Source: Octopus bimaculoides
Lineage: Eukaryota
Direction: 5' to 3'
Length of the DNA: 64,000 nucleotides
Assembly (NCBI RefSeq): GCF_001194135.2
Contig: NC_069001.1
Location: 1,814,374 to 1,878,373 of the forward strand
This document shows positions 11,311 through 54,220 of this stretch, piece after piece (position 1 is the stretch's first letter; every line of letters starts with the position of its first letter). The translations under genes and the position numbers were made by a program. Below the pieces are notes generated by a model, which was given only the letters and a program-made list of their open reading frames with translations, did no database searches and was not told the origin of the DNA.

Positions 11311-11594
11311 ACATCATCATCATCATCATCATCATCATCATAATCACCACCACCACCACCACCACCACCGCCATCATCATCATCACCACCACCACCATCA
11401 TTATTATCCTCATCAACATTTAACATCCATTTTCCATGCTGGCATGGGTTGGACAACTTGTCAATCAGTTAGTCGAATCTGGAATATTTAACGGGTAGGT
11501 ACATAAACTATGTCTACACCGTTACACCGTTTCTACTGCTATAATTGGCGCTAAAGAAATTATACGGTTTGTTGTTTCTATTAAGTGGAAGAAA

Positions 11595-11698
11595 ATGAAA
11601 CCCGTGGCCCCTGGTGAAGTGATCTATCGTGAATCGCCCTACGTCCATGTGGTGTCTGACAAAGAACTAAAGAACCATTGTAGTTCTTGTTTCAAAAG
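11595..11698 (+). CDS. SMYD3: SMYD3-like exon 1
   Basis: MKPVAPGEVIYRESPYVHVVSDKELKNHCSSCFK, S-sequence plus start of MYND; AG|gtaat; 104 nt. Confidence 0.85.
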
Positions 11699-11763
11699 GT
11701 AATCACAGACCGTCATCCGCATCATACACTGGTTTAATTACAGACTTCTGTTCCTCCCATCTA

Positions 11764-12100
11764 CCGACTTTGGTTTCCTATAACTTTCTTACAAATATAT
11801 ATCTTTTAATGAAATTTTCCAGATGTATATTCTAGGTATTGTAGATTGTGATTATATTAGAAAGAAAAAATAAAAATTTGAGATTTCATTTCCCCTCTCT
11901 GATCGGACTTTTGTTAAAGGCAATTATTTTGGTTAATGAAAATTTCCAGATACATTTTAGATGGTATAGATTACGAATGTATTTTTAAAACAGAGTTTTT
12001 ATCAAGATCACCGTACTGTACACCCACGAAAATGTATTTTGAGGAAATTTCATTAAAAAAATCTGCACTTTTGAGAAAGTTATAAGAAAACAAAGTCGGG
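11764..12100. mobile_element. MITE with long imperfect terminal inverted repeats; relatives at 28363-28557 and about 33750-33935
   Basis: ccgactttggtttcctataactttct ... agaaagttataagaaaacaaagtcgg. Confidence 0.7.
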
Positions 12101-12248
12101 AGGGGGGGAACACCTGTATCGTTATGGCCACACCCACGCAAACACCTGTTCATTAAGAGTTTATAAACCCCACCCCACTATCCTCACAACCATTGCCTCT
12201 TTACACTATAACATTATATTTTCTGCTTTCACCTCGTCTTCTTCACAG

Positions 12249-12312
12249 TGCTTCCAGCCTGAAACACTGTTCTCGATGTAAACTTCTGAGATACTGCAAT
12301 TTCAGCTGTCAG
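12249..12312 (+). CDS. SMYD3: SMYD3-like exon 2 (MYND finger)
   Basis: cacag|T GCT...CAG|gtaaa; ASSLKHCSRCKLLRYCNFSCQ; 64 nt. Confidence 0.92.
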
Positions 12313-12835
12313 GTAAATAATCCCTTAAAACTGTCCTTTGCTTTCATCTATTTTTTTGTTTTCATTAATTACTCTTATTTCATCATCATCATCATTGTAT
12401 AACACCTGTGTCCCATGCTGGTGTGGGTTAAATGGGTTGACAAGATCCAATCTATTGTTGGACTGCGTCAAATTCCAAATATGTTATTGCATAGTTTCTA
12501 TGGCTGGATGCCCTTCCCAGACACAATCCATCTTTTATGATAGAGGTACAGCCTGTCAAGTATATTAGTGGCTGAATATTCCACTAGCATCTCTACTCTT
12601 AATTCAACTCTCACATAGAATCTGCATAATGCAGAGAGTATAACGAAAGCCATGCCTTTGAATTAGATGTATAACCCACCAAATGGGCTTCTGTATAGTT
12701 TCCATGTAATTGAGTGGCACCCACCCACTAAAATTCCTGGGCCTGTCTCAAAATTTCAAAATGTTATTGTGATTTTATGAATTACAATGAATTAACATGA
12801 AACATTTCAACATGTTTGCTATCTTCCATTTCCAG

Positions 12836-12946
12836 AAAGCTGATTGGTCAATCCACAAGCAAGAATGTCCATTTTTCATTGATGTTGTACCTGAAGTCTT
12901 ATCTGAAAGTATACGAATGCTTCTGAGAATAATTATCAGGTACCAG
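12836..12946 (+). CDS. SMYD3: SMYD3-like exon 3
   Basis: tccag|AAA...CAG|gtagt; KADWSIHKQECPFFIDVVPEVLSESIRMLLRIIIRYQ; 111 nt. Confidence 0.92.
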
Positions 12947-13387
12947 GTAGTATGTTTCTATTGTCGTTTGTCTGCTAGCTGTTGTTGTTGTTGTTGTTGT
13001 GCCAAGCCAGCCCTCACTCGGCATGTGCAAACTGGGCTTATCTCCTCCTCCTCCTCCTCATCATCATTTAGCGTCCATTCTCCATGCTGATATGGGTTAG
13101 ATCAGTGATTCTCAACAGGGTCCATATAAAATTTTTGGGGGTCCACAATATGGGTTGGACGGTTTGACTGGGCTGTTTCGAAGGCTGCACCAGGCTCCAG
13201 TCTGATTTGGCATGGTTTTCTACGGCTGGATGCCCTTCCTACTGCGAACCACTCCAGGAGTGTAATGAGTGTTTTTATATGCGACAAGCATGACATAATG
13301 CCAAAGGTCTTGGTCATTGCCTCTGTAAGGTCCAACACTCGAAAGGAACTCAGCCACTTTACCCCCATGGGGCCCGTATATATATAT

Positions 13388-13588
13388 NNNNNNNNNNNNN
13401 NNNNNNNNNNNNNNNNNNNNNNNNNNNNNNNNNNNNNNNNNNNNNNNNNNNNNNNNNNNNNNNNNNNNNNNNNNNNNNNNNNNNNNNNNNNNNNNNNNNN
13501 NNNNNNNNNNNNNNNNNNNNNNNNNNNNNNNNNNNNNNNNNNNNNNNNNNNNNNNNNNNNNNNNNNNNNNNNNNNNNNNNNNNNNNNN
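13388..13588. other. Assembly gap (N run); other gaps at 20397-21048, 26549-26558, 36330-36405, 43255-43264, 45269-45574, 60894-60903
   Basis: Runs of n, mostly flanked by (TA)n or (CA)n microsatellites. Confidence 0.99.
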
Positions 13589-13627
<39 letters not shown>

Positions 13628-13700
13628 GGATGTCATCATCATTTACCGTTTGTCTTCCATGCTGGCATATGCTTATATTCTGAATTTCCTTTCTCTTCAG

Positions 13701-13770
13701 AATGGTGATCACACTAAAATGATTAGTACAGATCCTTACTGGAAGCGTTCCTTCTCAGACCTGATGTCAC
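13701..13770 (+). CDS. SMYD3: SMYD3-like exon 4
   Basis: ttcag|AAT...TCA C|gtaag; NGDHTKMISTDPYWKRSFSDLMS(H); 70 nt. Confidence 0.9.
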
Positions 13771-14071
13771 GTAAGACTGGTTTTCTCTTTGTTTTTCGTT
13801 ATTTATTCCTCCCAGTATTTCATATGCAGTGAGTGTTTGTGTTTATGTGAAATTGTGTCATTTGTTTGTATATCTGTGAGAGAAAGTGTATTACAGTGTG
13901 TGAGTGGGAATCGGAGAGTATCTGCTTATCATTGTTGTTGCTTTAATCCTTCAGCATTAAGCTCTGACATTAGGGGTGCCTGAGAAAACAAACAATTAGC
14001 AGACAGTAAGGTGAACGCAGGGGAAACAGAAGACATTAATAAACTTGTGTATTGTGTTGTCTGTCCAACAG

Positions 14072-14202
14072 ATTTAGAGAGAATGCAGCAAGACGAACTA
14101 CGATGTAAACAGTTTGCCCATGTGCTGAGTATTTTATCAAAAGTTCTGGAAGGTACTGAAGTTCTGCCACCGGTTCCACAGTTGTGGGAGTTCTTTGGTA
14201 AG
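14072..14202 (+). CDS. SMYD3: SMYD3-like exon 5
   Basis: aacag|AT TTA...AAG|gtagg; LERMQQDELRCKQFAHVLSILSKVLEGTEVLPPVPQLWEFFGK; 131 nt. Confidence 0.9.
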
Positions 14203-14874
14203 GTAGGTATTGCTGGATCCTCAGCAAAGCACATTCTCTGGTTCTCTCTCTTTCTCTCTTCCCCCTCTCTCTCTCCCTCTCTGTATGGCCTGGTGGTTAC
14301 ACTCATAATTGCTAGGTCATGGGTTTGATTCCCAGACTGAGAAACACATTATATTGTTAAGCAAGACCCTTCATTTCACATTGCTCCAGCACACAAAGTT
14401 ATTAGATAGGTAACCCTGTCTCAGAATATCCTTCCGATCAGAGGAAATTGTCTGCCTGCTCACCCAACCAACAAGGTGGTGTCATTCAAAAGCTAAAGCA
14501 CATTGTGATCAGCAATGTATAACCACATCCCATAACCTGGTCAATACCATTATATATATATATATATATATATGAAAAATTAAGATAAACACAAGCTTGT
14601 ATGTAAATCTGGTTGCTCAGAATCCTGTATTGGATGATCCAGGTGCATTTGGATGCTTAACTGGAACAGATTATCAGGAAACACTTTATTACATGAAGTT
14701 ACAGAGAGCTAATATCAATAGGACTACTATCACCACCACCACCATTACTACAGCTACTACCACCAGTGCTAATACTGCTATCACCACCACCATATCCTAT
14801 TACCACTACTACTGACCTTAATGCCTTATGTTGTTTCTGGAGCCCTTAAAACTGATGTGTCTTTTGTCTTACAG

Positions 14875-14945
14875 ATGGTCATCAACAGTTACAGCATTCA
14901 TGATGAGCTTCATGAAAATGTCATTGGATCTGGAGTTTATCTGGG
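14875..14945 (+). CDS. SMYD3: SMYD3-like exon 6
   Basis: tacag|ATG...CTG GG|gtgag; MVINSYSIHDELHENVIGSGVYL(G); 71 nt. Confidence 0.92.
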
Positions 14946-15409
14946 GTGAGTTTCGCCTCCGACCTCTTTCTGGTGGCTGTTTAGTTTATACTGTGTTTAT
15001 CTGGTTGATGAGGGTGGGGTGGGTGGGTGAGTGAGAGTGGAGGAATAAACCAACAACCTTCCTCCCTCAGATTTGTAAGTGACCCCTAAATCTTTTGCTC
15101 TCCAGAGCTCCAGACAATAATGCCCAGGCTGGAGTAATGTCATTTGTTTGAAACATTGCAATGTGTAAATGATATAAGTATTTTTTTTAAGAAAACCTTT
15201 AAGCAATTTAGGTGAGAAGTTAAGCAAAATATGATATTGTCCTACATAGGTTGTTTAATAATGCTTCTATTATATTTCGGGAAAGCTTCCCTTTATCAAA
15301 TATAAGCTACAAAATAATCCAAGAGATCAGAGAAAAAATGTTATTGGTGTGTTCTCAACTGCATTGCTTAAAGATCTTCCTACAAGTATCTGTATCATGG
15401 ATATTTATA

Positions 15410-15639
15410 TTAACCGTTTAGCATTCCGATTCCTCTGTCGAATGTAATGCTTATGTATTCACATTGCTTTGAATTAATCATGCATTATCTCTTAGCTTTG
15501 AGATTTCAATGATGTAATCGTTTATTTTTGAATTGCTGTTGTAAGAATTAGATGTAAGAAACTGGATCCAGCCAGTTTGAACATAAACCAGGTAAAACAT
15601 TTGGGCCAGGTATGGTTGGTTTAAATGCTAAAGGGTTAA
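15410..15639. mobile_element. piggyBac-like MITE with TTAA target duplication; relatives near 11010-11165, 22960-23090, 30820-31180
   Basis: TTAA-ccgtttagcatt ... aatgctaaaggg-TTAA. Confidence 0.7.
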
Positions 15640-15674
15640 ATCGATAACTAATCATATGATTTACTTGTTTCTAG

Positions 15675-15783
15675 GGCATCGTATTTGGATCACCAATGTT
15701 GTCCTAATGCTACTGTAAGCTTTAGTGGCACAAAACTTGCCATCAGGGCCCTGGAGCCCATAACACAACCGTTACCTAATCAG
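15675..15783 (+). CDS. SMYD3: SMYD3-like exon 7 (SET signature)
   Basis: tctag|G GCA...CAG|gtata; ASYLDHQCCPNATVSFSGTKLAIRALEPITQPLPNQ; 109 nt. Confidence 0.92.
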
Positions 15784-16848
15784 GTATACAACTTATATTT
15801 CTGTTTTACTATTTTTCTGCTGTCTTTTCTTTTTTTCCTCATTTCATCGTCCTCATCTTTTAACATCTGTTCTCCATACTGGCGTCGGTTGGATGGTTTG
15901 ACAGAAGATGGCCAGCTGCAGAGCTCCACTGGGCCCGAATTATCTGTTTTGGCCGGGTTTCTACAGCTGGATGCCCTTCCGAACACCAACCACTTTACAG
16001 AGTGTACTGGGTGCTTTTACGTGGCACTGGCACAAGTGCCTTTTTGTTGCAATGAATGTAAATCCAACAAATATCTTTGTTCATTTAACTCTGTTTTTGC
16101 CATGTTAGCATGAATTTGGATGAGGACATATTTCAGGTAGGAATTTCTTCTTTTTCTCTGCCTGGTTCCAACCCTTACTAGTTTCTCTTCCTGGTGCCAA
16201 CTCTTGCCAGTTTTTCAAGTAAAGAATTTCTAATCCACAAATTTTTAAAAGTGTGGTGTGACTGGTCACAATACCAACAAGGAACTATCATCATCATCAT
16301 CATCATCATTCAACGCCCATCTTCCATGCTGCCATGGGTGAATGGTCACCCACATACAACTTCTGCTCTTCTCTAAGTTATTCCCCTTGAACAAGATGTA
16401 GCCACTGTTACGTGTTGTGCGCTTAATTGAACCAGAACGATAGGTCTCATCTGTTTTCATTCAAGGGGGTGCAATCTTTGGAGACATCTTTGTTTATTAG
16501 ATATACACACACACTTATGCATAACATAAACACACTAACTCATACAACAGACACCTACATAGATGCATTCATTCACACACATACAGATACACATATACCC
16601 ATACATCGATAAATACACGACAGATCTTTGATTTGATGCACACTCACATAGACACACTCGTTCACACACCTACCTACATGCTCACGTTCACACACATACA
16701 GATACACATATACCCATACATGCATAGACAGACGCCCAAAAATCATTTGACTCGATGCACATCTACATACATGTTTATATACATCGAGACACCACAGATG
16801 TTTGGCCCAAACAATATATTTCACTTATTTGTTGTTGCTTTCTTTCAG

Positions 16849-16965
16849 GTTTTCATCAGTTACATCCAGAACGATGCCCCCAGCTGGGAAAGGAGAGAAG
16901 AATTGCTACAGCGATACTATTTCAGATGTATCTGTTCCATGTGTACCACAGATGCAGAGCAAACG
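16849..16965 (+). CDS. SMYD3: SMYD3-like exon 8 (catalytic Tyr and post-SET)
   Basis: ttcag|GTT...ACG|gtaaa; VFISYIQNDAPSWERREELLQRYYFRCICSMCTTDAEQT; 117 nt. Confidence 0.93.
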
Positions 16966-17090
16966 GTAAATACTTTGTTTCCACAGCTTTAGGGGTTTTC
17001 TTTCCTTGCAAAGTGATCTTTTAGACCACACGGCCACCCCTGTACCTAGACATGTATTTGCCTATAATTTGCTTCTACTTTCTTTTATAG

Positions 17091-17163
17091 GATAAACAAA
17101 TGACCAGTGTGAAGTGTTTTATGGCTAACTGTGATGGATTTACTGGGATTAAAGAAATTAACA
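17091..17163 (+). CDS. SMYD3: SMYD3-like exon 9
   Basis: tatag|GAT...AAC A|gtaag; DKQMTSVKCFMANCDGFTGIKEIN; 73 nt. Confidence 0.88.
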
Positions 17164-17209
17164 GTAAGTAATTAATGCTAAATTTGCAGTTGCTGGTATC
17201 ATCTTCAGC

Positions 17210-17640
17210 ATTTGATCCTCAGAGGAGGGGAGGGGGGGGTATAAAAAGAAAGCCAGACTTGCTATCTTCAGCTCAGTTTTCATCTTGGTCCATACGCATG
17301 ATCGTGAATGTTGTTTAACGACCGAAAGATTACGATCAGGAATACAAGCATTTGAAATGGGGATCCTCGAAAGGATCTCTGGTGTAATGTTACGGGACAA
17401 AGTGCATAGATTAGAGGTCAGGGAGTCTCTCCAGGTCGAACCGCCACTGCTCCACATTGAGAGGTCACACCTCTGGTATTATGGACAAGTGCTTAGAATG
17501 TCACAGGAAATAATCACAAAATGGATTCTTCAAGCCAAGCCAACCAACAAGACAGCTAGGGATAGTCCAAGAATGAGTTGGTTGGACAATATCCACAGTC
17601 TCAGTTGGTCATGTTTCGGAGTTCAAATAGAATGACTTCT
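17210..17640 (+). mobile_element. RTE-clade LINE fragment (region after the RT domain)
   Basis: IQAFEMGILERISGVMLRDKVHRLEVRESLQVEPPLLHIERSHLWYYGQVLRM...ARDSPRMSWLD matches RTE AFEM...LRWFGHVxRM...RGRPxxxW. Confidence 0.85.
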
Positions 17641-17789
17641 GAGTAGAAAAGATAAATAGATGGAATTTTAAAAAGGGAACCTATAAGACATGAGTTGTGG
17701 CACATTGTTATAAATGTCATCATGGAGCAGTTAAGGGTGACAGCATTTGTGTAAATTAAATCTTTGTAATTTATGATGTTTCACCACAG

Positions 17790-18170
17790 GGTGCAGTCTT
17801 TGTTGCACTGTGGTGGCTTGTGTGCATTGATGACCCCTGAGAGCTATGCCAGGGGAGTGCAAGCCCCTTGTAGATCCTCCTCCCTTGCTGGACAGGTCAA
17901 AGGATAGGGGCTAAACTAATATGGACCACCTCTTCCCAGAGGTAAAAATAGGCTTACCTATGGCCAACTTTGCTACCTAGAAAGGCAAAAACAAAGTTAT
18001 GGAAACCTCGATGGCAATCTAAGACCACCAAGACCTGGAAGAGGAAGGCCTTCCTTCAGGAAGATCGGGTACTGAAAAAGTAGGGATCCAACTGCTCAGA
18101 GTTACAAACAGTGGAGAAATGTCATTGATGCCCTTTGCTCCATAAGGAGCAAAGAGCTTAAGCAAGTTTC
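17790..18170 (+). mobile_element. Short RTE-derived element: 5'UTR-like segment joined to RTE 3' end
   Basis: ggtggcttgtgtgcattgatgacccctgagagctatgcc...ggacaggtcaaagg resembles RTE/Expander 5' ends; ...tggagaaatgtcattgatgccctttgctccataaggagcaaagagcttaagcaag resembles an RTE 3' end. Confidence 0.55.
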
Positions 18171-18223
18171 TTATCTTAAGCATCACAGTTTTTCTATAAG
18201 ATTCCTCAAATACTTTCTTTCAG

Positions 18224-18364
18224 ATGATGGCTACTGTCAGTTGTGGCCCTGTGTGAAGTGTAAAGTGACGGAATTGCCTACTGAATATGTTGATGAGGTT
18301 TGCCAGTTGTGGTTGGAAACCAGGAAATTTGTGAAGGATTTAAACAAGATGTTTGAGAGTGGAG
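18224..18364 (+). CDS. SMYD3: SMYD3-like exon 10
   Basis: ttcag|AT GAT...GGA G|gtcag; DGYCQLWPCVKCKVTELPTEYVDEVCQLWLETRKFVKDLNKMFESG; 141 nt. Confidence 0.85.
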
Positions 18365-18557
18365 GTCAGTATTTCCATTATTTGTTGTCTCTAACTACCG
18401 TCCCTCATCACTTACCATTCCTTTCTTGAGAACCACTTTATCACCACTTCCAAACATTGTGCCCTGCTGGATCTCATTGGACAAGTCTTGAAAACATGGT
18501 TGTGTCTGTTGTACAAACTCTTTGATGAGCACCAATTTTCTCTCTCTCTCTCTCCAG

Positions 18558-18735
18558 AAATCCAAAATGCCTTGGACTCTGCTGAAGAAAACTTGAAGAA
18601 AGTTGAAAATAGTTTATTCCATGAATCTAATCTGAATATTGTCAGTACCGTGGCAATTGCCAAAGATGCTTGCATTTCCCTGCAGTTATGGGAGAAAGCA
18701 GCAGTTTACAGCGAGAAGCTCTTAAAACAAGTGCC
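18558..18735 (+). CDS. SMYD3: SMYD3-like exon 11 (TPR-like C-terminal domain)
   Basis: tccag|AA ATC...GTG CC|gtaag; IQNALDSAEENLKKVENSLFHESNLNIVSTVAIAKDACISLQLWEKAAVYSEKLLKQV; 178 nt. Confidence 0.88.
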
Positions 18736-19166
18736 GTAAGTCGAAGCTCTCTTTCCTTTGTTTTCTCTTCTTCATAATAGAATCTTTTAATACAAAGGAT
18801 AATAATTGGATCAAATTTAGGTCCAAAACCAGCAATTCTGAAGGGAAGGGGTCAGTTGATATCATTGACTCCGGTAGTTAGCTGCTGCTATATTTTATTG
18901 GTCCTTTGAGGAAGAAAGGCAGAGTTGACCATGGCAGAATTTGAACTTAGAATGTGAAAAGCTGCAGCAAATACTGTCAAGTATTTTCTCTGATGTCTTA
19001 ATGATTCTGCCAGCTTGCTGTTTTATCATTATTAATAATAATAATAATAATAATTTCGTTTTTGTATCTGGTTTGCAAGATTCTTTAAATGAATTTGTGT
19101 GTCGGCCACATTCAATAATGTTAAATACATCAACTGTTATTTTTTTTTTCCTTTTTCCCTTTAAAG

Positions 19167-21184: not shown

Positions 21185-21610
21185 AATAATAATGGTTTCA
21201 AATTTTGGCTCAAGGCCAGCAATTTAGAAAGGAAAGGGGACTAAGTTGATTACATCAAACCCCAGTATGTAACTGGTTATTAATTTATCGACCCCCAAAA
21301 GGATGAAAGGCAAAGTTGACCTTGGCGGCATTTGAATTCAGAATGTAAAAAAGCCAAAAGAAATGTTGCAGAATATTTTATCCAACATCCTAACAATTCT
21401 AGCAGTCATAGAAAATAATTCTAATTTTGGCACAAGACCAGCAATTTTGGGCTTGCAGGGAGGGGGGGGGAAGGTTATGTCATCCCCAGAACTTGACTGG
21501 TCTTTATTTTATCAACCCCAAAAGGATTTGAACTCAGAACGTAGAGTTGGAAGAAATGTTTGCTGCTAAGCATTTTGTCCGACATGTTAACCATTCTGCC
21601 AGTTGACTGC
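21185..21610 (-). mobile_element. Cluster of SINE family C copies; others near 7130-7340, 10165-10320, 23330-24000, 28570-29170, 35010-35150, 45900-46075
   Basis: Recurring gagttcaaattccgccgaggtcgactttgcctttcatcct...gtaccag body with (ATT)n tail; boundaries approximate. Confidence 0.75.
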
Positions 21611-24600
21611 CTCAGGGGGACAGTGAAAGTTAAAGCCCCCAGATTTATGTGAAGGAGAGGAAGAAAGTAACTATGAAATGTTACATTTGAAGGAATTAAG
21701 CAGTGTTAGAGAAGAGAGAGGCCTGGGTAAGGTGGAGGGTCCTACAAACGCCTTTTGACAAGGACTGCAAAATTTTGGTCTCTACACCTTACACCCACAG
21801 ATGATGATGATGACAATGATGGTTTTCACATGATAGTAATAACTACACCCTTGCACAACACTGTTTGGCTGCAGTTGTTGAACATATGCACATACAAAGG
21901 GCTACATACAATATTTGGTTAGGGACGGGTTCCATTGATTAATTATATCAACTCCCAAGTATATGACTGGTACTTATATTTTTTTCATCAACCCTAAGAT
22001 GAAACTTGCAAAATGTAAAGAAACATAACTTCTTGATATTTCCATCCACTAACAGCCACCAGTTTGGGAGTTGGGGAGAGAAAGAGAGGGTGAGCAATTA
22101 ATTACATTCCCCTCGTTATTTCAGTGGGACAAAAGAACTATAAATAAGCATGGTTGTGTGGTTGAGAAGCTGACTTTGTAACCATGGCTGCGTAGTTTTG
22201 GGTTCATTCCCACTATGTGGCATCTTGGACAAGTGTCTTCTCTAGCCCCAGACTACCCAATGCCTTAAGTGAATTTGGCAGATAGAAACTGTCTGGAAGC
22301 CTGCTGTATCTATGTGTCCATGTGTATATTTATTCTATATAAAATACACACGTATATCTATACATTCATACAAACAATGTATTTTATGGCATATAAGACT
22401 CATTTTCCCCCAAAAGATATCTCAGTTATTCCAGGTCCTATATGCAAAGTTGCTGTAAATATTGTATGCTTTCATGCACTAAAACCCTCTCCCGAATATA
22501 TGCTGCAGAAACTCAAGTGCATCTTTGATGCCATCAAGTACGATACATGTGTATATGTTTGTCCTCCCCCCTTGACAACTGATGTTGGTTTGTTCACATC
22601 CCTGTAACTTCGCAGTTAGACGTAAGAGTGATAGCATAAATACCAGACTTAGAAAGAAAAAGAAAAAAGCAGTAGTCAATTACTTTGACAAAGCTCTTGA
22701 AAGTAGCAAGTGCCCCAGCATGGCCAACGTCCAGTGACTGAAACAAGTGAAAGATAAATACCTTGCTCTACCAATCCACCACCCTCGGCCCAAGGTCAGA
22801 AATCTGAGTGGGGAGGGGGTCTTGATTAAACTGCCCCAATGGCATGAAAAAGAAAAATATTGGTCAAGCACAGACGTTGATTTAAACCAGGACAAATATT
22901 GTAGCTTGTTTTATGCTCAAACTGACCAGATCTCATCTTTCACACTTACCCAACAATGTCATTCCAAACATAAATAATCACATCACTGAAAGCCACCAGA
23001 TAATGCAGGATTAATTCAAAACAAAGTGAATAAATATAAGTATTACCTTTGATAGAATAATCTGAATACCAAAGGATTAATCAACTGTTTAATCTCTGTC
23101 CAAGTTTCAGACTGTACCTAGGTTAAGAAACGATTATTAGCATTTCTGGCACAGGCATATAGGGTCAGAAATTTGAGCAGAGACGGGCAGTCAAAACTGC
23201 TCAACCCCTTAGCGTTCAGATTCTTCTGTTAAATGTAATCTTATTTATTTACATTGCTTTGGATTAATTAGGAATTACCTTGTAGCTTCAGGAAGCTGGC
23301 TACATTGACTCCCAGTACTTGACCCTGATGGAAAGCAAATGTGATCTCAGCACAATTTGAGCCCAGATGAAATGGCCCGAAGCATTTTGTCCAGCATGCT
23401 AAGATTCTTCCAGCTCACTCAATAATAATAGTTTCAAATTCAACTGCAACTTATTTTATCGACCACGAAATGATAAAAGGTATGGTTAACTTCGGTGGAA
23501 TTTGAACCCAGAACATAAAGACAGATGAAATGCTGCTAAGCATTTTGTCTGGCATGCTAACAATTCTGCCAGCTCACCGCCTTAATAATAATAATAATCC
23601 TTTCTATTATAGGCACAAGGCCTGAAATTTTTGGGGCAGGAGACAGGTCGATTTAAAGATCTTAGAACTCTGCCAGTTTGCAGCTGCCTTATAATGGTTT
23701 GTGATTAGGTACAAAACAGCAGCTCTAGAAGGCCTCAGTCGATACTTTCGACCCTGGTACTTTATTTTCTGAAGCCTAAATGGGTGAAAGACAAAAATGA
23801 CCTAATCGGGATTTGAACTCAGAGCCAGCAATTTTATAGGAGGAAGGTTTAGCTGATGCCATCGATCCCAGTACGTGACTGATACTCCGATTGATCGATC
23901 GCTATCAGAGGGATGAAAGGCAACGTTGACATCAGTGGGATTTGATCTCAGAACGTGAAGAGCTCGAAGTAATATTTGTCCGATACTCTAACGATTCTGC
24001 AAAAGCGCCACCCTCTCGAAAACGATGAAATGGTTAGAAAAAAAAAACCAAATGTAGGAATATACGCAGTTCTTTTCTTCTTTTCAATTGTCTGGCAACA
24101 CATACATACACACGTTACAGACAATCTTTCGCAGAAAGCATTCGTTCGGCAAATACTTTCACTTCTTTGAATCGCTAATGTTTAAGTGCTTTTTGTGTAT
24201 GTATGTCTGTACACATACAAATATTCATACACAAGAACACATATACACACGCAGAAAATACAAGCGATTCAGCTGAAGAGAAAATTAAAAGATTTTTTTT
24301 TTTGCGCAATTTACAGAACAAATATTTTCACTTCTTATATTTTTTCACCGAAAGATTGCTCCCACTGGGCTCTGTTGAGTGGTTTAATAAGTTCTAAAGT
24401 CGTGAGTAGTCGAAACTTCTCTTCTACAGTTTAAAGGTGCTTGCATCATCAATATAAACATTTGTTGTCAGGGAAAGGAAGAGAGAGGGAGGTGATATAA
24501 GCGGTCTAATAGCGACCATCCCTCATAACACACGTCATTTTTTGTTTTCATCGGACTTTGTATGTTTTGGTTTGAAATAACATCGTTCTCGTACAGACTG

Positions 24601-25165
24601 CACCCGCCACACGAAAGGGGGAAATTCACCCACCCAACATGTAAATTTACAGCGCTTACAAGGTAGGTACATGTTTGTTTGTAGGCTTCCAGGTCGACCA
24701 CTCACCTATGAATATTTTGGCATTTAAAACAAAGATGTGAGGCGGAACAGGAACTTGTAATTTTAAAATAAGGCTCAAGGGAGCTATAAACACACACACA
24801 CATATATATACATATGCATATACACACAGTACCACATTATATATCACTTAAAAATAAAATCTTTCTTTCAATAATATATCTGCTGTACAACATCAACAAA
24901 ATACAAAAAGAAAAAAAAATGCAAGACAGAAAACTGAGAAGAGAGCGAGGTTCGAAACCCAACAAAGTAGTTATTTTCGAGTCCCGTTATATATATATAT
25001 ATGTACCACATCATTATTAATAAAATTAGATTAAAAAAAAAAATTCTCTCACTGTTTTTAGCAAACCAAAATTCTACATCAAAATAAAGATCTTTTTTTT
25101 TTTTTTAAAGTTTTTTTTTTTTTTTTTTTTGCTTTACCAAGTCCTGCCATAAAGTTTTAAGAGTT

Positions 25166-26110
25166 TTACTGGGTGGGTAGCAAGTCTATAGGGGTAGCGA
25201 ACTTAAATTCCGGAGGGAATAGATCTCGTGCTCTGGGGTACATCAGTTTATAAGACTGCCGTATAGTTACCTCGGCCACACCCGTCACCACACTAATTTC
25301 TCGTTGGGTTTTCTTGTTCTCAGAGGCCTGAGATGCCATATATATTGCGGCAGCGGCGACAGTGACGGGGCTTTTCCCCGGTACCAGGTCCAAATCAACA
25401 GCAGTTTTGGCGATGTGAGTAGCGGCTTTCTGTACTTGGTTTGTCATGTTTAGACTGGAACAGAACCGAGACATGAAGTCCCCGGTGGTAATTAAGTCAA
25501 CATTGGTCTCCAGTGTCTTTAGAATCAGCTTGAACGTTCGTCCGATCTCCTTCTTGGATACTTTCGAAACGGCACATATTTCTTTGAAAGTCCTCGGAAC
25601 CCCTTCCTGTCGACAGGCGATGTACATACATGCTGAAGCGATCGCATCGTTCGCCCTTCCTTTCAAGGATTTGCTCTCGTGGACCTGTTTAAACAAAGTG
25701 TTGGCTTGATCGGCAATCATCGTGGGGAGATTGAGCCGTTCGGACATTTGGCTGATTTCACGGAAAGCTGTTAACAGTGTTCGGTCAGATACGCTGAGGT
25801 TCCTTCGACTGTGGTACATGGGTTTGCCGTTGTCGTCCAGCAGTGTATCGCCCGACGAAGTGGCTATCATCGTAGACAGGTCCCCGCCGTCCAGCAAAGG
25901 GTTTTCGGCGGCACCGACACGTGAGGCATCCTTGGTGTTCTTGTCGTTGTTGAAGGTACGCCATTCGGAACCGACATCGATGACTCGGTCACCGACCACC
26001 AGACCACACTCGGAACATATCATATCTCCGGCATGATAGTCCTCGATTAGAGGAGAATCCGGGTGAGCAGAACAATGCAAGCGAGCCATTCGCGAAGCCC
26101 TTAACGCCAT
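25166..26110 (-). CDS. GTF2B: Transcription initiation factor IIB, single-exon 314-aa ORF
   Basis: Zn ribbon C-x2-H...C-x2-C, B-reader [11 protein letters not shown], two cyclin repeats ([14 protein letters not shown]; [11 protein letters not shown]); full length, no introns, no frameshifts. Confidence 0.97.
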
Positions 26111-26299
26111 CGGTCAGGTTGTTTGTTTGGATTTGCTTAAACTTGAGACGATAAAGTAACAATTAATAAACTGTTATGAATGGCGCAGAGGTAGAAAGAC
26201 ATACATACACATATACACACAGATATATATACTATATAATGTGTATAGATATGCTTTAAACAGAGGAGAGAATATATTTAGTCAACTAATCCATAGACA

Positions 26300-26390
26300 A
26301 CTGATTTCTCGCAACTTGAAATGTCTCACTTATACATAATTCTACTTCCGATTCTGCGCACATGTTACAGAAATCGACCAATCAGCATTG
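26300..26390 (-). promoter_or_regulatory. Putative TFIIB promoter: ETS-like CGGAAG, TGCGCA and CCAAT box
   Basis: cttccg 26345-26350, tgcgca 26355-26360 and gaCCAATcag (CCAAT at 26378-26382), about 240-270 nt upstream of the ATG. Confidence 0.45.
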
Positions 26391-26502: not shown

Positions 26503-26548
<46 letters not shown>

Positions 26549-26558
26549 NNNNNNNNNN

Positions 26559-26665
26559 ATAAATATATATATATTTATTTATAAATATATATATATTTAT
26601 AAATATATATATATTTATTTATAAATATATATATATTTATATATATATACATATATATATATTTA
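26559..26665. repeat. AT-only quasi-palindromic minisatellite
   Basis: Repeated ataaatatatatatatttattt units. Confidence 0.85.
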
Positions 26666-28362
26666 TATTCTCAATGCACACACTAATTTATATAAACTAA
26701 CACACAGGCACAGTCTTAGTACACATACACTAACACTTAATACGACCACACACACATACATACACTCTCAATGCACACATTTATAAACTCTTTATACAGA
26801 CATACAAATTCATACTTAATAGAAACACACTCAAATGCACTCTTAGTACACACACACACACACACACTTCATAGAACACACGAACACAAATGCACTCTTA
26901 ACACAAGCACGCACCTGAACACAAGTGCACTCTTATGATACACTCGCATCCACCTACCCTTTTAGATGATGAGTTCACGGAGTTAGTCTGACAGGATTGT
27001 GTTTTGTTTTTTTTTGTGGTTCTCAAACTGTCTGAATCTCAACTAAACACACACACACACAGCACTAATTTACTTTTGGGTTTCCTGAAGTTTGTCGTTT
27101 GAAATAAACCAACAATATTAAATCGGAAATAGAACGTCTGTTCGTTTGCCAATTGCACACGCAAAATGTATGCGCATGGATCTTTTTACCTGTATCTTGT
27201 TTCAGGCATTGGACTGCGGCCATGCTGGGGCAATGCATTAAAGGGATTCAAGTCGAACGAATCGACTTAATTGTTGGTTTTTTTTAAAGCCTGGTTCGTA
27301 TTTTAAGTTACGAGAACGTAAACAAAACAAATCCGGTTGTCAAGCAGTGGTGGTGGACAAACGCGCGCGCACTGGGTTTCTTTCAGTTTCCGTCTACCAA
27401 ATCCACTCAAGACTACAGTTGATCCGGGGCTATAGTTGAAAATACTTGCCCAAGCTGCCGTGCGGTGGGACTGAACCCTAGACCACATGATTGGTATGCA
27501 AACTTCTTAACCACACAGCCACGCTGTGTTGTAACTCTGTCTCACCTGGGTTAAACCATCCCAGATAGTTTGCTTCGTCCGGTAATAATAGTTGTGATAA
27601 GAGTTTAAGGCGATCTTTCGATACTAGTCCGAAATATCGGCCTTTTCCTAGTATCGAAAGATCGCCATCTAATGTACCTCTTTTTATTTTACGATGATCG
27701 GGTGTGATTTGAAAAGAAAAAAATGACTGCTATTTTTAGCAGGAGAGACACCGCGCAGAAGCTCCCTCGTTGGCAAATACATGACCATCACAAATGCAAC
27801 GCTTGACGGGTTTGTCAGAGAGAGCAAGCAGAGCCAACCAGGCTGGCAGCACTACTTAAAAAAAAAAAAGAGAAACGAAAGAAATTGAATGTAATTCTTC
27901 GCTTGGCGTGCCATTCAGAAAAGGCTCGCGGGCCGCAGGTTGCCTTTGTTTTTAGAGGTTGTCATTAAAAATTAAAATATTGCTTGAACAGGAAAAGACA
28001 ACCGAGTTATTTCCCTTTATACGTATATTGTCACGTTTACGTTTTGATGCGTCCAAACTGAGTTGGAGAAGCAGAACAATAAAAGAATTATATCCTGCAA
28101 TTAACTGACACATTTGTCCAATTCCAGGCAAAACCAAAAGTCGCGATTGTCCCCATTGTGACTTCATAGCAGGCAGCTTCTTTTATTTTTAAAATCCTTT
28201 CCTTCAGACTCATACGTTGAATTCGAGGAACCAACATTTTTTGGTTCATTTATAGTTCAAAGCCCGGTTACGAAAAACAAATAAAAAAAAAAAGCTAGCC
28301 TACTGGACGTAAAAAACGAAAATGGAAGCAAAAATTGCGCAATTTTCGGGGGTTTGTGGAGA

Positions 28363-28557: not shown

Positions 28558-30256
28558 ACCCCGCCCCCTTTACGTTCTGAGTTCAAATTCTGCCAAAGTT
28601 GACTTTGCCTTTCATTCTTTCAGGGTCAATAAATTAAGTACCAGTTGTGTACTGGGATCGATCTAATCGACTGGCTCCCTCCCCCAAATATTTCGGGCCT
28701 TGTGCCTAGGGTAGAAAAGAATAATCATTCTTTCTCATTTTGGTACAAGGCCAGCAATTAACAGGGGATGATGCTAGTCAAATACCCTGACCCCAGTACT
28801 TAACCGGTACTTATATTATTGACTTAAAAGAATGAAAGGCAAAGTTGACCTCAGTGGGATTTGAACTCAGAACATAAGGAACTGGAAATGACACCAACAA
28901 TTTTGTCCAAAGTGCTAATGATTCTGCCACCTCACTGCCTTAATGATAATTAAGTAACGATTTCAAAATTTTGGTATGAGTCCTGTAACTTTTTTAAGTG
29001 GGGACAGGTTAGTCAATTACTCCAGTACTCAAAGGGTACTTATTTTATTTAACCCCCACCGTGGTCCTAGAAAGGATGAAAGGCCAAGGCAAGCTAGACA
29101 GGATTTGAACTCAATGTAAAGAGCTGGAAAAAATGTCATTGTCTGATATACTAACAGTTCTGTCATCTCACCACCTTAATGAGAACAAGGATTGTGGTGG
29201 TGGTGATGACGATAAGAAGAAAATGATGACATGAAAAAACAAGACAGAATAGGAAGCAGATAAAGACAAATGATAGAAGCCATTAGAAAATGGCCGAAAG
29301 AAAGCAAAAATGAAGAAGAAAAATGGAAGACAAAAGAGAACAAGGAAAATAAAAATAATAAAAGGACAAAATACAAGAGTGACTTCAGTTAACAAATTTA
29401 CTTTCATTCATGTGGTCACATATCTACAGTCAATATTTTGGTAAAAGAGGCAGGATAGCACTAATATTCCAATATATATATATTTGATTAGTTTATGTTG
29501 CTGTGAAGTTCTTTCTTTGAGAGGAGCCATCAGTGTTAAGGCCATGTGAAGCAACTTTATTTATTTAGATATTTTTTGCTTTTTGGGTGGTTTTTTGCAT
29601 TTTTTTTTAAAGAAAATATAAATTTCATTTTATTTTATTTTATTTCTAAATTGTTTTATTTAATTTTAGAAAAACTGAAGCATGTCATTGACAATTCCAG
29701 AACATATTGAATTTTGTGTGTGACTTTTGGTTCATCCTGTATGTGTGTATATGTATGTGTGTGCGTGTATGTATATAAATATATATATGTATATGTATGT
29801 ATTTTGGCCTGCTGACTTAGTCAGTAGGGTGGCCTCATTAGAAAGCTAAAATGATGCAAAGTGCATTGTGACTAGCGATGTATAACAACATTCAACAGTC
29901 TGCTCAATCACATGATCATGTGATATATATATGAGTACGGGGCACTGCATTTGTGTGTGTGTGTGTGGTGGGAGGAAGAAGGAGCATACGGTTTAGGTGT
30001 ATATATGCAGGGTTGTTTGGGGAGCAAGAATGAAAACGTGTTTGCATGATTAAGTATGCGTGTGTGTGTGTGTGTGTGCATGTATTTGTGGGTGTGTTAG
30101 TCCATATTGATTGTCAGTGGGGTGGTTTATGTGAGTGTGTGTGTAAGTGCATGTGCTTGTTTGTGTCCCTGTGTATATGCCTCTACATGAAACCATGTGT
30201 GTGTGTGTGTATGAGAGACAGAGAGAGAAAGAGAGAGAGAGAAGGAGAAATATGTC

Positions 30257-30470
30257 TCAGTTCTTGGTCTCATCTCCATTCTTTTCTTCCTTATTATTCT
30301 TATTATATTGGCGGTGCCACTCAATGTTGGTCTTTGACACTCCTTCGCCCCGTTTCGCAGCCTGTCTCCCGCTGTACATCACAATGATGCAAAGGACAAT
30401 GGTGACAGCCACCATGCAGAGGCTGACATAGACACGGCTCCAGTCCTTGGCTTTGTTGATCACTGATATC
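30257..30470 (-). CDS. FAM162: FAM162 (UPF0389) exon 3, terminal, with transmembrane helix
   Basis: tttag|G ATA...TGA; ISVINKAKDWSRVYVSLCMVAVTIVLCIIVMYSGRQAAKRGEGVSKTNIEWHRQY...*; 214 nt. Confidence 0.9.
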
Positions 30471-31619
30471 CTAAAAGAGAGAGAGAGAGAGAAAAGAAAC
30501 AAATATCAGAACCGAATAATAATAATAATAATAATAAAAACAAACAAACAAAACAATAACATGCATTGTTGAGTGGTAAAGAAATTCATTTTGCAACCAT
30601 GTGGCTTTGGGTTCAGTCCCACTATATGACACCTTGGGAAAATGTTTTTGACTGTAGCCCAGGACAGATGCCTTGTGCAAATGAATTTGGAAGCCCCTTG
30701 ATATAAGTAGGATCAACAACAAAAAAAAAAAAGCACTCCATTCCAGTGAGAGATAAATATCATTGGTTATATGCTGTATTTAATTCTTTTGCTTTCAAAT
30801 TCTTCTGTCAAATTTAATAATTATCCATTCACAGTGTTTTGAATTAATTATGCATTATCTTGCAGCTTTGAGATTTTGATGATGTTATTGTTTATTGTTT
30901 ATTTTTGGAATGACATTGTAGGGTAAGTGTGAGAGGCCAGATCTGGCTGGTTTAACCCTTTAGCATTCAGATTATTCTGTCTAACATAATCCTTATTTAC
31001 GCACATTGTTTTGAACTAATCATGCATTATTTCATAGCTTCAAGATTTCAAAGATGTGATTGTATATTTTTAGAATGACATTGACAAGTAGGGGTGAGAA
31101 GCTGGATCTAACTGGTTTAAACATTAAACAGGTAGAATACTTGAGGCCAGACATGGCCAGTTTCAATGCTAAATGTTTAAATATAAGCTACTAATAGTTT
31201 CATGTCATGGAAACATACACAATTATTCAGCAGATTGATATATTGTGCCTTGTGTCTCCAAGTAATCTTCAGGCTCTCACCTGAAAGAATTGCTTGGAGA
31301 CACAAGGTAAAATATATAAATCTGCTGGATCATTGTGTTTCCAAAGCATGAAACTATTAGTTGCTCATATTTAAATACTGTGTATATTAAATGGTGTGTG
31401 TGTGTATGTGTGTACGTGCATGTGTTTGACATACAACACTACTTGATAACGGTGTTGGTTTGTTTACTTTCCTGTAACTAGTTGTTCAGCATAACAGACT
31501 AATAGTTCCAGACCAATGCCTTGTAAATGAATTTAGTAAACAGAAAATGTGTGGAAGCCTATCATATATGTGTCTGTGTGTAGCATGCATGTGCACAGGT
31601 GCACATGCACTGGATTCAA

Positions 31620-32130
31620 GGTTACCAGAAATGACGAAGAGGGGAATACTTGAATGAAATTAAAAGAACTTATGGAGAGGCTACCATGATGGGACTATAG
31701 AAAATTATGTGAGAGAGAGGGAGAGACAGGAGGGAGACAAAGAGAGAGGGAGAGGAGGGAGACAAAGAGAGAGAGACAGGAGGGAGACAAAGAGAGAGAG
31801 ACAGGAGGGAGACAAAGAGAGAGGGAGAGATAAAATCAATGAGGTATCCAGTTATGATGTATGGATGCTCTAAGAGCTGGACAGTTCAGAAACTGGTGCA
31901 TTTGGAAAATGGAGATGGAGAAGATTATTGAGACTATTATGGATGGAAAGAAAAGAACAAAGAAAAAAAAAACAGGTCAATACTGCAGCAAATGAAATCT
32001 GAGAGAACTTTGGCAGCTATTGATTGTGAAATTTTGAAATAAAGAATAAAAATATAAATAAAAATTTGGTCATGCTATGAGGGCAGATAGCATAGAACAA
32101 CACATTATTTTAAGAAAAACTGAGAATCCA
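31620..32130 (+). mobile_element. Decayed RTE-like LINE interrupted by a GAGAGAGGGAGACAGGAGG minisatellite (about 31713-31830)
   Basis: Remnants of PVMMYG..SW....AFExWRWRRLLRL motifs across frameshifts. Confidence 0.55.
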
Positions 32131-32139
32131 AGAAAAAAA

Positions 32140-32470
32140 AAGCTGACAATGCTATGAATATATCAACCAGATAAAGACTCGCCATCAGGCCTCAACCATA
32201 CTCTGAAAACCTTGCTTCCCTGGACATGGACACATTAAAGCTCATACATTTGGCAACTGATTTGGTAGACACCCACAAGATTATCCATTATTTTTCTAAT
32301 AACAACCATAGGCACCTTTTTGAATCCCATACACCTAACACTCATGGATACACTTACAAGATTAACTACCCACATCAGCTATTAGAAGTCAGGACACTAT
32401 ATCCTTCAAAACTTCCATAGCCATGCTTCCTGAAATTCGTCAACAGCACACCTGATGCTTTCACCCCAAT
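32140..32470 (+). mobile_element. CR1/L2-like LINE 3' fragment
   Basis: LASLDMDTLKLIHLATDLVDTHKII...FESHTPNTHGYTYKI resembles CR1 L..L..RR...DL...YKI...TRGH..KL. Confidence 0.6.
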
Positions 32471-53127: not shown

Positions 53128-53193
53128 GTACCTACCTTGTTTTTTATATTTATTTATTGCCATTGATATTATTACAATTATTGTTATTATTAT

Positions 53194-53958: not shown

Positions 53959-53999
<41 letters not shown>

Positions 54000-54220
54000 G
54001 GTATTATTATTAAGGCAGTGAGCTGGCAGGAGCATCAGCACACCAGACCAAATGCTTGGCAGCATTTCTTCTTGCCCTACGTTCTGAGTTCAAATTCCGC
54101 TTTGGTCCAATTTGCCTTTTATCCTTTTGGTGTCAATGAAATAAGTAGCACTCAAACACCGGGGTCAATGTAGTCGTCTCCTCCAAAATTGCTGGCCTTG
54201 TGCCTTTTGTAGAAAGATTC
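53194..54220 (+). mobile_element. Four head-to-tail SINE family C copies separated by (ATT)n
   Basis: Units start near 53194, 53423, 53672 and 54013, each preceded by an ATT run. Confidence 0.85.

What the first reader, a model, noticed from the sequence alone, without database searches (positions are those of the whole stretch)
25093..26110. Intronless, intact TFIIB: retrogene or intron-stripped orthologue
Seen: a full-length 945-nt single-exon ORF in a window where the other five genes are split into small exons. On the coding strand an A20 tract begins 35 nt after the stop (25111-25130), with A14 beyond it. No target-site duplication was found, and poly-A/T runs are common here, so this evidence is weak. 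Established: vertebrate GTF2B has multiple introns; tissue-specific paralogues are known for TBP (TRF2/TRF3), TAFs and TFIIA (ALF), and for TFIIB in plants, but I do not know of a well-described one in animals. Inference: if an intron-containing TFIIB exists elsewhere, this is a retained specialised basal factor, for example germline or neural.
Basis: partly seen in the sequence, partly recalled or inferred. Interest (0 to 1): 0.75.

Follow-up and report, generated by a model that had tools for sequence, protein, structure and literature searches.

The report
Intronless TFIIB gene of coleoid cephalopods
This is the ordinary, apparently only TFIIB gene of an octopus; octopuses, argonauts and cuttlefish all carry it without the eight introns that other molluscs have and in a different gene neighbourhood, so it is most likely an old processed copy that replaced its parent rather than a specialised extra copy.

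Summary
Window 25166-26110 (-) is an intact 314-aa TFIIB with a zinc ribbon and two cyclin repeats, and it aligns without gaps to human TFIIB. A20 and A14 runs follow the stop codon. The five neighbouring genes are split into exons.

The specialised-paralogue reading is not supported. The same single-exon gene is found in Octopus vulgaris and O. sinensis, Argonauta and Sepia, with a shared CCAAT/ETS promoter. dN/dS is about 0.03. No second cephalopod TFIIB appears among the best 120 database hits.

Chiton, oyster, abalone and a nemertean have TFIIB genes with about eight coding introns at matching positions. In each, the gene sits head-to-head with an EndoG-like gene. Cephalopods have none of the introns and no EndoG neighbour; in octopods the gene lies between a DUF1075 gene and a SMYD gene.

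Best reading: a processed copy replaced the parent gene before coleoids diverged ("retrogene replacement", a known kind of event). Intron loss at the original site followed by rearrangement remains possible.

The A-run is weak evidence. No poly(A) signal precedes it, no target-site duplication is present, its length varies between Octopus species, and a Sepia contig reads through it.

This is a new example of a known phenomenon and is of moderate to low interest.

The parts
25166..26110 (-). Single-exon coding sequence of TFIIB (314 aa, stop codon included). It encodes a zinc ribbon, the B-reader and B-linker, and two cyclin-like repeats.
   Evidence: Pfam PF08271 plus two copies of PF00382. 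Gapless alignment to human TFIIB, E 6.9e-145.
26111..26340 (-). Predicted unspliced 5' UTR of about 230 nt. The start site is inferred by analogy with Sepia transcripts.
   Evidence: Contigs L016-L018, from three different sequencing runs (L016 is from a Sepia esculenta transcriptome run), begin within 7 nt of each other directly 3' of the ETS motif. They are colinear with the S. pharaonis genome. Applying this to the octopus window is an inference.
26342..26350 (-). ETS-type motif CGGAAGTAG in the core promoter.
   Evidence: Conserved in three Octopus species, Argonauta (two copies) and Sepia.
26377..26385 (-). Inverted CCAAT box (CTGATTGGT, NF-Y type) 20-37 nt upstream of the ETS motif.
   Evidence: The 9-mer is identical in Octopus, Argonauta and Sepia, although synonymous sites are saturated between these genera.
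26325..26334 (-). TATAAG-like element just 3' of the ETS motif (TATAAGTGAG).
   Evidence: Argonauta has TATAAATAAG and Sepia has TATAACAAGG at the same relative place. Its function is inferred.
25111..25130 (-). A20 run on the coding strand, 35 nt after the stop codon.
   Evidence: It is A10 in O. vulgaris and O. sinensis, interrupted in a third Octopus species, absent in Argonauta, and A15 at +52 in Sepia.
25093..25106 (-). A14 run in the context ACTTT-A14-GATC.
   Evidence: Sepia pharaonis has ACTTT-A15-GATC. The resemblance is unexplained and carries low weight.
30260..33508 (-). Upstream neighbour: the last two coding exons of a DUF1075 / UPF0389 gene (30260-30505 and 33371-33508).
   Evidence: PF06388, E 1e-11 and 8e-10. 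The splice sites were read. The gene holds the same position in O. vulgaris, O. sinensis and Argonauta.
11499..18736 (+). Downstream convergent neighbour: exons of a zf-MYND (SMYD-like) gene.
   Evidence: PF01753 at 12157-12399. Argonauta matches to window ORFs at 17078-18736. The gene is annotated as zf-MYND in the octopod loci.

Best explanation
This is the canonical, and as far as the databases show the only, TFIIB gene of coleoid cephalopods. It encodes the general RNA polymerase II initiation factor, with a zinc ribbon that contacts the polymerase, a B-reader and B-linker, and two cyclin folds that bind TBP and DNA.

Its intronless state is old. Before octopuses and cuttlefish diverged, a fully spliced TFIIB mRNA was reverse-transcribed. 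Most likely the copy inserted at a new site (in octopods, between a DUF1075 gene and a SMYD gene) and came under a CCAAT/ETS housekeeping-type promoter. The multi-exon parent next to EndoG was then lost. This is retrogene replacement, also called an orphan retrogene.

Shown here:
- the intact protein;
- the single-exon structure in four genera;
- eight shared introns in the outgroups;
- the different neighbourhood;
- strong purifying selection;
- a conserved promoter;
- unspliced transcripts in Sepia.

Inferred:
- retroposition to a new site rather than intron loss at the original site;
- loss of the parent gene;
- broad expression.
For: - Identity.
- Single-exon coding sequence in O. vulgaris, O. 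sinensis, Argonauta hians and Sepia pharaonis.
- Multi-exon outgroups: chiton has 9 coding exons, abalone 10, oyster at least 7 aligned pieces, and the nemertean gene spans 2.5 kb for a 318-aa product.
- Matching intron positions: the exon ends map to the same window codons, about 42, 69, 105, 133, 176, 213, 245 and 270.
- Ancestral neighbour: an Endonuclease_NS (EndoG-like) gene lies head-to-head with TFIIB in all four outgroups. It is absent from the 64-kb window and from the 20-kb cephalopod loci.
- No shared neighbours: nothing except the TFIIB coding sequence is shared between the outgroup and cephalopod loci.
- Selection: dN/dS is 0.016-0.028 between Octopus species. dN is 0.04-0.06 against Argonauta and Sepia, with dS saturated.
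- No second cephalopod TFIIB.
- Placement: the coleoid sequences form a clade inside Mollusca.
- Promoter: the module CTGATTGGT...CGGAAGT...TATAA is conserved across coleoids.
- Transcripts: contigs L016-L018, L016 from a Sepia esculenta transcriptome run, start just after the ETS motif and are colinear with the genome.
- Precedent: retrogene replacement is a described phenomenon with the same diagnostic criteria (PMC5803294; PMC3548309).
Against: - The classical marks of retroposition are missing. There is no target-site duplication and no poly(A) signal before the A-run. At this age neither would be expected to survive, so they cannot decide the question.
- The break in synteny could come from the extensive genome rearrangement known in coleoids (my own knowledge) rather than from retroposition.
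- The empty-site test failed for lack of outgroup DUF1075 orthologues, and the octopus EndoG locus was not found.
- 'Only TFIIB' rests on the best 120 hits of a protein database, not on a whole-genome TBLASTN. A divergent paralogue below about 69% identity would not have been seen.
- The Sepia flanks show no neighbouring genes within 10 kb. Orthology of the insertion site between octopods and decapodiforms therefore rests on the promoter motifs and the 3' A-run alone.
- Nautilus was not available.
Confidence: 0.6

Rival explanations
1. Intron loss at the original site. The ancestral gene was converted by recombination with its own full-length cDNA, which removed all eight introns while the gene kept its place and promoter. 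Later rearrangements in coleoids separated it from EndoG and gave it new neighbours. The gene is still the sole canonical TFIIB.
For: - The present state is the same as under retroposition: no introns, a single copy and strong constraint.
- There is no target-site duplication and no poly(A) signal before the A-run.
- The promoter carries CCAAT and ETS motifs, which are typical of the bidirectional housekeeping promoters expected for an EndoG/TFIIB pair. A Tubulanus CCGGAAGT lies about 200 nt upstream of its TFIIB ATG.
- Coleoid genomes are heavily rearranged (my own knowledge).
Against: - This needs two separate events, complete intron loss and the break-up of a gene pair conserved from nemertean to molluscs, where retroposition needs one.
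- cDNA-mediated loss usually removes 3' introns and spares 5' ones (my own knowledge). Here all eight are gone.
- No CCAAT/ETS module like the cephalopod one was found in the chiton, oyster or abalone intergenic regions.
- No ancestral neighbour is left within 64 kb.
Confidence: 0.28
2. This is a retained, specialised retrocopy, for example germline or neural, that coexists with an intron-containing canonical TFIIB elsewhere in the genome.
For: - Only the best 120 of 1068 hits could be inspected, and no whole-genome search was possible.
- The coleoid stem branch is somewhat longer: about 5 percentage points lower identity to non-mollusc outgroups than other molluscs show.
- Tissue-specific paralogues of other basal factors are known (my own knowledge).
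Against: - A canonical parent would be expected at about 75-85% identity to this protein and would therefore rank within the list shown. None is present from the annotated proteomes of O. vulgaris, O. sinensis, Argonauta or Sepia pharaonis, or from the Logan transcript assemblies.
- dN/dS of about 0.03 and 70-75% identity to vertebrate TFIIB are those of a core factor.
- The exact cuttlefish protein is indexed in 50 blocks of the public assembly collection (sequencing runs, on my reading). These include a Sepia esculenta juvenile transcriptome.
Confidence: 0.05
3. Artefact. The ORF is a processed pseudogene that has recently gone silent, or an assembly or contamination artefact, rather than a working gene.
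For: Its structure resembles that of processed pseudogenes: no introns and an A-run after the stop.
Against: - The reading frame is intact in six sequences spanning saturated synonymous divergence.
- Flanks are conserved and syntenic in four assemblies.
- The gene is transcribed.
Confidence: 0.01

Closest known systems
Retrogene replacement / orphan retrogenes (e.g. amphioxus SYCP1, tetrapod Sowah; Krasnov 2005; Ciomborowska 2013; Garstang & Ferrier 2018, PMC5803294; PMC3548309)
   Same: A single-exon gene is the only copy in a clade. Its orthologues elsewhere are multi-exon and sit in a different, conserved neighbourhood. The copy is under purifying selection and does the parental job.
   Different: The gene replaced here is a core general transcription factor needed for all Pol II initiation, and the event predates the coleoid radiation. 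Proof from an empty target site or from a relic of the parent is lacking. The amphioxus case had its flanking synteny documented.
Canonical metazoan TFIIB (human GTF2B; PDB 5IY6 and others)
   Same: The protein is about the same length and aligns without gaps over residues 4-312 (about 70% identity to a mammal). The zinc ribbon ligands, B-reader, both cyclin repeats and the C-terminal helix-turn-helix segment GVAxVTIRQSY are all present.
   Different: Gene structure only. There are no coding introns, against about 8 in other lophotrochozoans. Vertebrate GTF2B is also multi-exon (my own knowledge).
Tissue-specific basal-factor paralogues (TRF2/TRF3, ALF/TFIIA-like, plant pBrp and extra TFIIBs)
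   Different: No coexisting canonical copy was detected, the sequence is not divergent, and the gene is conserved as the single orthologue across coleoids.
Cephalopod intronless SP6-9b/c paralogues (PMC7661307)
   Same: These are intronless genes shared by cephalopods and attributed to retrotransposition early in the lineage.
   Different: They are extra copies kept beside an intron-containing SP6-9a. Here the intronless gene appears to be the only copy.

Membership tests
TFIIB (general transcription factor IIB) | N-terminal zinc ribbon with C-x2-C/H ... C-x2-C ligands | tested here: met
   PF08271, E 1.3e-12, residues 13-53. The sequence CSAH...CSEC aligns with human CPNH...CPEC.
TFIIB (general transcription factor IIB) | Two cyclin-like TFIIB repeats forming the core domain | tested here: met
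   PF00382 matches two stretches, E 1.6e-58. Residues 105-312 align to human core-domain crystal structures at E about 1e-100.
TFIIB (general transcription factor IIB) | Orthology to TFIIB rather than to BRF1, BRF2 or TAF1B | tested here: met
   The match to human TFIIB scores E 6.9e-145, against 2.7e-16 for Brf1 and 7.7e-09 for Brf2. The sequence groups inside the mollusc TFIIBs.
Processed retrocopy / retrogene | Lacks all introns of the parental or ancestral gene | tested here: met
   About eight intron positions are shared by chiton, oyster, abalone and nemertean. All are absent in the window and in four other cephalopod loci.
Processed retrocopy / retrogene | Lies at a locus unrelated to the ancestral one | tested here: met
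   The EndoG head-to-head partner is present in all four outgroups and absent from the cephalopod loci. No other shared neighbour was found. Caveat: only 10-kb flanks of the outgroup loci were seen, and later rearrangement is not excluded.
Processed retrocopy / retrogene | 3' poly(A) tract that follows the parental polyadenylation signal | tested here: inconclusive
   A-runs follow the stop in Octopus and Sepia. But no AATAAA or ATTAAA precedes them, their length varies, Argonauta lacks them, and a Sepia contig reads through.
Processed retrocopy / retrogene | Flanking target-site duplication | tested here: not met
   Outside the AT microsatellite, only chance-level 8-mers are shared between the flanks. 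A duplication would not be expected to survive, given saturated dS.
Orphan retrogene (retrogene replacement) | Parental multi-exon copy absent from the genome | tested here: inconclusive
   No second cephalopod TFIIB appears among the best 120 protein hits or in the cluster members. A whole-genome TBLASTN was not possible with these tools.
Tissue-specific basal-factor paralogue | Coexists with a canonical paralogue and shows divergence or restricted expression | tested here: not met
   No canonical partner was found. dN/dS is about 0.03. The gene is transcribed in a juvenile Sepia esculenta transcriptome. Tissue breadth was not tested.

The most novel reading that the evidence does not exclude
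In the stem lineage of coleoid cephalopods the essential initiation factor TFIIB was replaced by its own retrocopy. This uncoupled it from an EndoG/TFIIB divergent gene pair shared by nemertean and molluscs and placed it under a new CCAAT/ETS promoter. The A-run that sits at about the same place after the stop codon in Octopus and Sepia would be the maintained remnant of the original poly(A) tail. If so, this is a datable, irreversible genomic character for Coleoidea and a case of a core Pol II factor surviving a complete change of regulatory context.
Probability: 0.35. Interest if true: 0.45.

Novelty: new member of a known kind. Interest (0 to 1): 0.33.

Why it matters
If confirmed, this adds a core, dosage-sensitive housekeeping factor to the short list of well-documented retrogene replacements. 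It also gives a clean rare genomic change, the loss of eight introns together with a new locus, that marks coleoid cephalopods. Checking it in Nautilus would date the event.

It bears on how an essential gene can change its promoter and neighbourhood without harm. It is also a small data point for the large-scale genome reorganisation of coleoids.

It does not reveal a new kind of transcription machinery. The idea of an animal germline or neural TFIIB paralogue is not supported here.

Tried and rejected
1. I searched for the octopus EndoG orthologue in order to inspect the ancestral locus. The best 120 hits to oyster EndoG held no named cephalopod protein, so the test could not be made.
2. I tried an empty-site test through outgroup orthologues of the DUF1075 neighbour. 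The word-indexed search returned only O. sinensis and a fly. This was a dead end and used the last protein search.
3. I searched for a target-site duplication between the promoter/start-site region and the sequence after the A-runs. The only notable match is GTAGAATT, which happens to lie at the predicted start site and 18 nt after the A14 run. 70% of shuffles also share an 8-mer, and Sepia shows nothing comparable. I rejected it as chance.
4. I looked for a poly(A) signal before the A-run and found none in any species. The first ATTAAA and AATAAA lie about 780 and 1400 nt downstream of the stop in Octopus.
5. I looked for the cephalopod CCAAT/ETS module in the outgroup EndoG-TFIIB intergenic regions, since its presence would have favoured promoter retention. 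No comparable module was found, and the motifs are too generic to decide.
6. I considered taking the contig ends at the A-run as poly(A) sites. I rejected this because the longer contigs L009-L014, which carry 2.2 kb of upstream genomic sequence, stop at the same run, and L015 reads through it. These ends are probably assembly breaks at a homopolymer.
7. L001, an Octopus species contig, is colinear with the genome through both flanks and extends upstream of the promoter. It says nothing about splicing.
8. Scans of the window for tRNAs and Rfam families found nothing.
9. I did not run structure prediction or a fold search. The sequence match to solved TFIIB structures is already decisive.

Full report
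**What is there.** Window 25166-26110 on the minus strand is one uninterrupted ORF of 314 codons. An in-frame TGA lies two codons upstream of its ATG. Pfam finds the TFIIB zinc ribbon (PF08271, E 1.3e-12) and two TFIIB cyclin-like repeats (PF00382, E 1.6e-58). Residues 4-312 align without a gap to residues 6-314 of human TFIIB from solved pre-initiation complexes (E 6.9e-145). The zinc ligands, the B-reader segment [11 protein letters not shown] and the C-terminal GVAxVTIRQSY segment are all kept. Brf1 and Brf2 score far lower, at 2.7e-16 and 7.7e-09. The A20 run (25111-25130) starts 35 nt after the stop, and the A14 run (25093-25106) follows it.

**Setting in the window.** The closest named proteins are 99% identical, from Octopus vulgaris and O. 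sinensis, so the window is from an Octopus species. My guess is O. bimaculoides; the source of the window's own protein is hidden. Exon-sized ORF fragments identify five other genes, and each fragment matches only a slice of its Pfam profile:
- an alpha/beta-hydrolase, a weak match, near 2.3-4.2 kb (-);
- a zf-MYND/SMYD-like gene from about 11.5 to 18.7 kb (+);
- a DUF1075/UPF0389 gene with its last exons at 33371-33508 and 30260-30505 (-);
- a Peptidase_C78 gene near 52.9-54.7 kb (+);
- a guanylate kinase near 63.1-63.9 kb (-).

Canonical AG and GT splice sites were read for the DUF1075 exons.

**The intronless state is shared by all coleoids sampled.** The coding sequence is a single exon in:
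- O. vulgaris (L004) and O. sinensis (L005);
- Argonauta hians (L002);
- the cuttlefish Sepia pharaonis (L003);
- a short contig from a third Octopus species (L001).

In the octopods the neighbours are the same as in the window: DUF1075 upstream on the same strand and zf-MYND downstream and convergent. The Sepia flanks show no recognisable gene within 10 kb.

A core-promoter module is nevertheless shared by every genus:
- an inverted CCAAT box, CTGATTGGT;
- an ETS motif, CGGAAGT, 20-37 nt downstream of it;
- a TATAA-like element after that.

In the window these lie at 26377-26385, 26342-26350 and 26325-26334. Synonymous sites are saturated between Octopus and both Argonauta and Sepia. These conserved non-coding words therefore indicate one orthologous locus and one origin before the octopod-decapodiform split.

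**Outgroups are multi-exon and have a different, conserved neighbour.** TFIIB spans 12.8 kb in the chiton Liolophura with 9 coding exons, 16.9 kb in abalone with 10, 6.4 kb in oyster with at least 7 aligned pieces, and 2.5 kb in the nemertean Tubulanus. Their exon ends map to the same places in the octopus coding sequence, near codons 42, 69, 105, 133, 176, 213, 245 and 270. About eight introns are therefore ancestral, and all are missing in coleoids.

In all four outgroups an Endonuclease_NS (EndoG-like) gene lies head-to-head with TFIIB. No EndoG sequence exists in the 64-kb window or in the 20-kb cephalopod loci. A six-frame comparison finds nothing shared between the outgroup and cephalopod loci except the TFIIB coding sequence itself.

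**It behaves as the canonical gene, not a specialised copy.**
- dN/dS is 0.016-0.028 between Octopus species. dN is only 0.04-0.06 against Argonauta and Sepia, where dS is saturated.
- The coleoid sequences form a clade inside Mollusca. Their stem branch is moderately longer: identity to non-mollusc outgroups is about 5 points lower than for other molluscs.
- Among the best 120 of 1068 hits, every cephalopod sequence belongs to this gene's clusters.
- No protein lies between 80% identity (chiton, a gastropod) and 88% (the cuttlefish and squid cluster). A retained canonical parent would be expected in that range.
- The exact cuttlefish protein is indexed in 50 blocks of the public assembly collection, which I read as separate sequencing runs.
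- One of those runs, SRR19578114, is a Sepia esculenta juvenile transcriptome.
- Contigs from three different runs (L016-L018; L016 is from SRR19578114) start within 7 nt of one another, directly 3' of the ETS motif. L016 is colinear with the S. pharaonis genome in a single block. The mRNA is therefore unspliced from its start site through the coding sequence.

**The A-run.** It is weak evidence for retroposition.
- It is A20 plus A14 in the window, A10 followed by T10 in O. vulgaris and O. sinensis, and interrupted in the third Octopus species. It is absent in Argonauta and is A15 at +52 in S. pharaonis.
- No AATAAA or ATTAAA lies between the stop and the run in any species. The first such hexamers in Octopus are about 780 and 1400 nt downstream.
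- Sepia contig L015 reads through the run. Contigs L009-L014, which carry 2.2 kb of upstream genomic sequence, end at the same run, so those ends are likely assembly breaks.
- No target-site duplication exceeds chance.
- One point is unexplained. The local context ACTTT-A14-GATC in the window resembles ACTTT-A15-GATC in Sepia. This could reflect slippage-maintained persistence, functional constraint or coincidence.

**Interpretation.** Loss of all eight introns at once points to a spliced RNA intermediate. Two routes fit.

The first is retroposition to a new site followed by loss of the parent gene, known as retrogene replacement or an orphan retrogene. The diagnostic criteria in the literature are a single-exon sole copy at a locus different from that of multi-exon orthologues (PMC5803294; PMC3548309).

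The second is conversion of the resident gene by its own cDNA, followed by rearrangement that removed EndoG.

I favour the first at about 0.6 against 0.28. One event then explains both the intron loss and the break-up of a gene pair conserved from nemertean to molluscs. Complete loss that includes the 5'-most introns is also less typical of cDNA conversion (my own knowledge). Coleoid genomes are known for extensive rearrangement (my own knowledge), so the synteny argument is not decisive.

**Novelty.** The paper library holds nothing on TFIIB gene structure in cephalopods. Intronless cephalopod SP6-9 paralogues attributed to early retrotransposition are described (PMC7661307). The case is a new example of a known kind of event, notable mainly because the gene is an essential general transcription factor and the change marks a whole clade.

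**Limits.**
- No whole-genome search of any cephalopod assembly was possible.
- No Nautilus data were available.
- No tissue-resolved expression data were available.
- The octopus EndoG locus and the outgroup DUF1075/SMYD loci could not be retrieved.

Noticed in passing
L006 1-4611, L007 9005-10307, L008 5494-8063, L019 8072-9374: An EndoG-like (Endonuclease_NS) gene lies head-to-head with TFIIB in chiton, oyster, abalone and a nemertean. This looks like an old lophotrochozoan divergent gene pair. In oyster the two annotated genes overlap at their 5' ends.
   Followed up: partly
window 26325-26385 (-): A CCAAT-box/ETS/TATAA-like promoter module upstream of the intronless TFIIB is conserved in Octopus, Argonauta and Sepia despite saturated synonymous divergence. 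Sepia RNA contigs start right after the ETS motif.
   Followed up: yes
L002 9400-10000 (Argonauta hians): In Argonauta the promoter module lies about 590-627 nt upstream of the ATG, against about 240-272 nt in Octopus. The extra sequence is mostly (AT)n and (AC)n simple repeats, so the 5' UTR is either expanded or contains an unrecognised intron.
   Followed up: no
window 25093-25106 vs L003 about 10975-11000: The context ACTTT-A14-GATC after the octopus stop codon resembles ACTTT-A15-GATC after the Sepia pharaonis stop codon, although the surrounding 3' sequence barely aligns. This is unexplained.
   Followed up: partly
window 25446-25709 (+) and 25722-26036 (+): Two ORFs of 87 and 104 aa lie antisense to the TFIIB coding sequence, and outgroup ORFs give antisense tblastn matches there. 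These are most simply by-products of the conserved sense frame, not genes.
   Followed up: partly
one search hit list (P0048/P0050; P0046/P0053; P0049/P0055): Some animals do carry more than one TFIIB gene. The snail Bradybaena similaris has two consecutively numbered genes on one contig, and Limulus has copies on separate contigs. For Tachypleus the two entries are labelled isoforms X1 and X2 on one contig. Animal TFIIB duplicates therefore exist, though not in cephalopods as far as seen.
   Followed up: no
window, whole; e.g. 53167-54172, 28568-28950, 23442-23641, 21196-21359: About 24% of the window matches other parts of itself. A dispersed element of about 100-190 nt recurs at many sites and also in the O. 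vulgaris and O. sinensis flanks, so it is probably a SINE-like repeat. ARAGORN finds no tRNA and Rfam finds nothing.
   Followed up: partly
window 13388-13588, 20397-21048, 26549-26558, 36330-36405, 43255-43264, 45269-45574, 60894-60903: There are seven assembly gaps (runs of N, 1265 bases in all). One 10-N gap sits inside the (AT)n microsatellite at 26503-26668, about 160 nt upstream of the TFIIB CCAAT box, so sequence there may be incomplete. The low-GC reading at 20-21 kb is due to a gap.
   Followed up: yes
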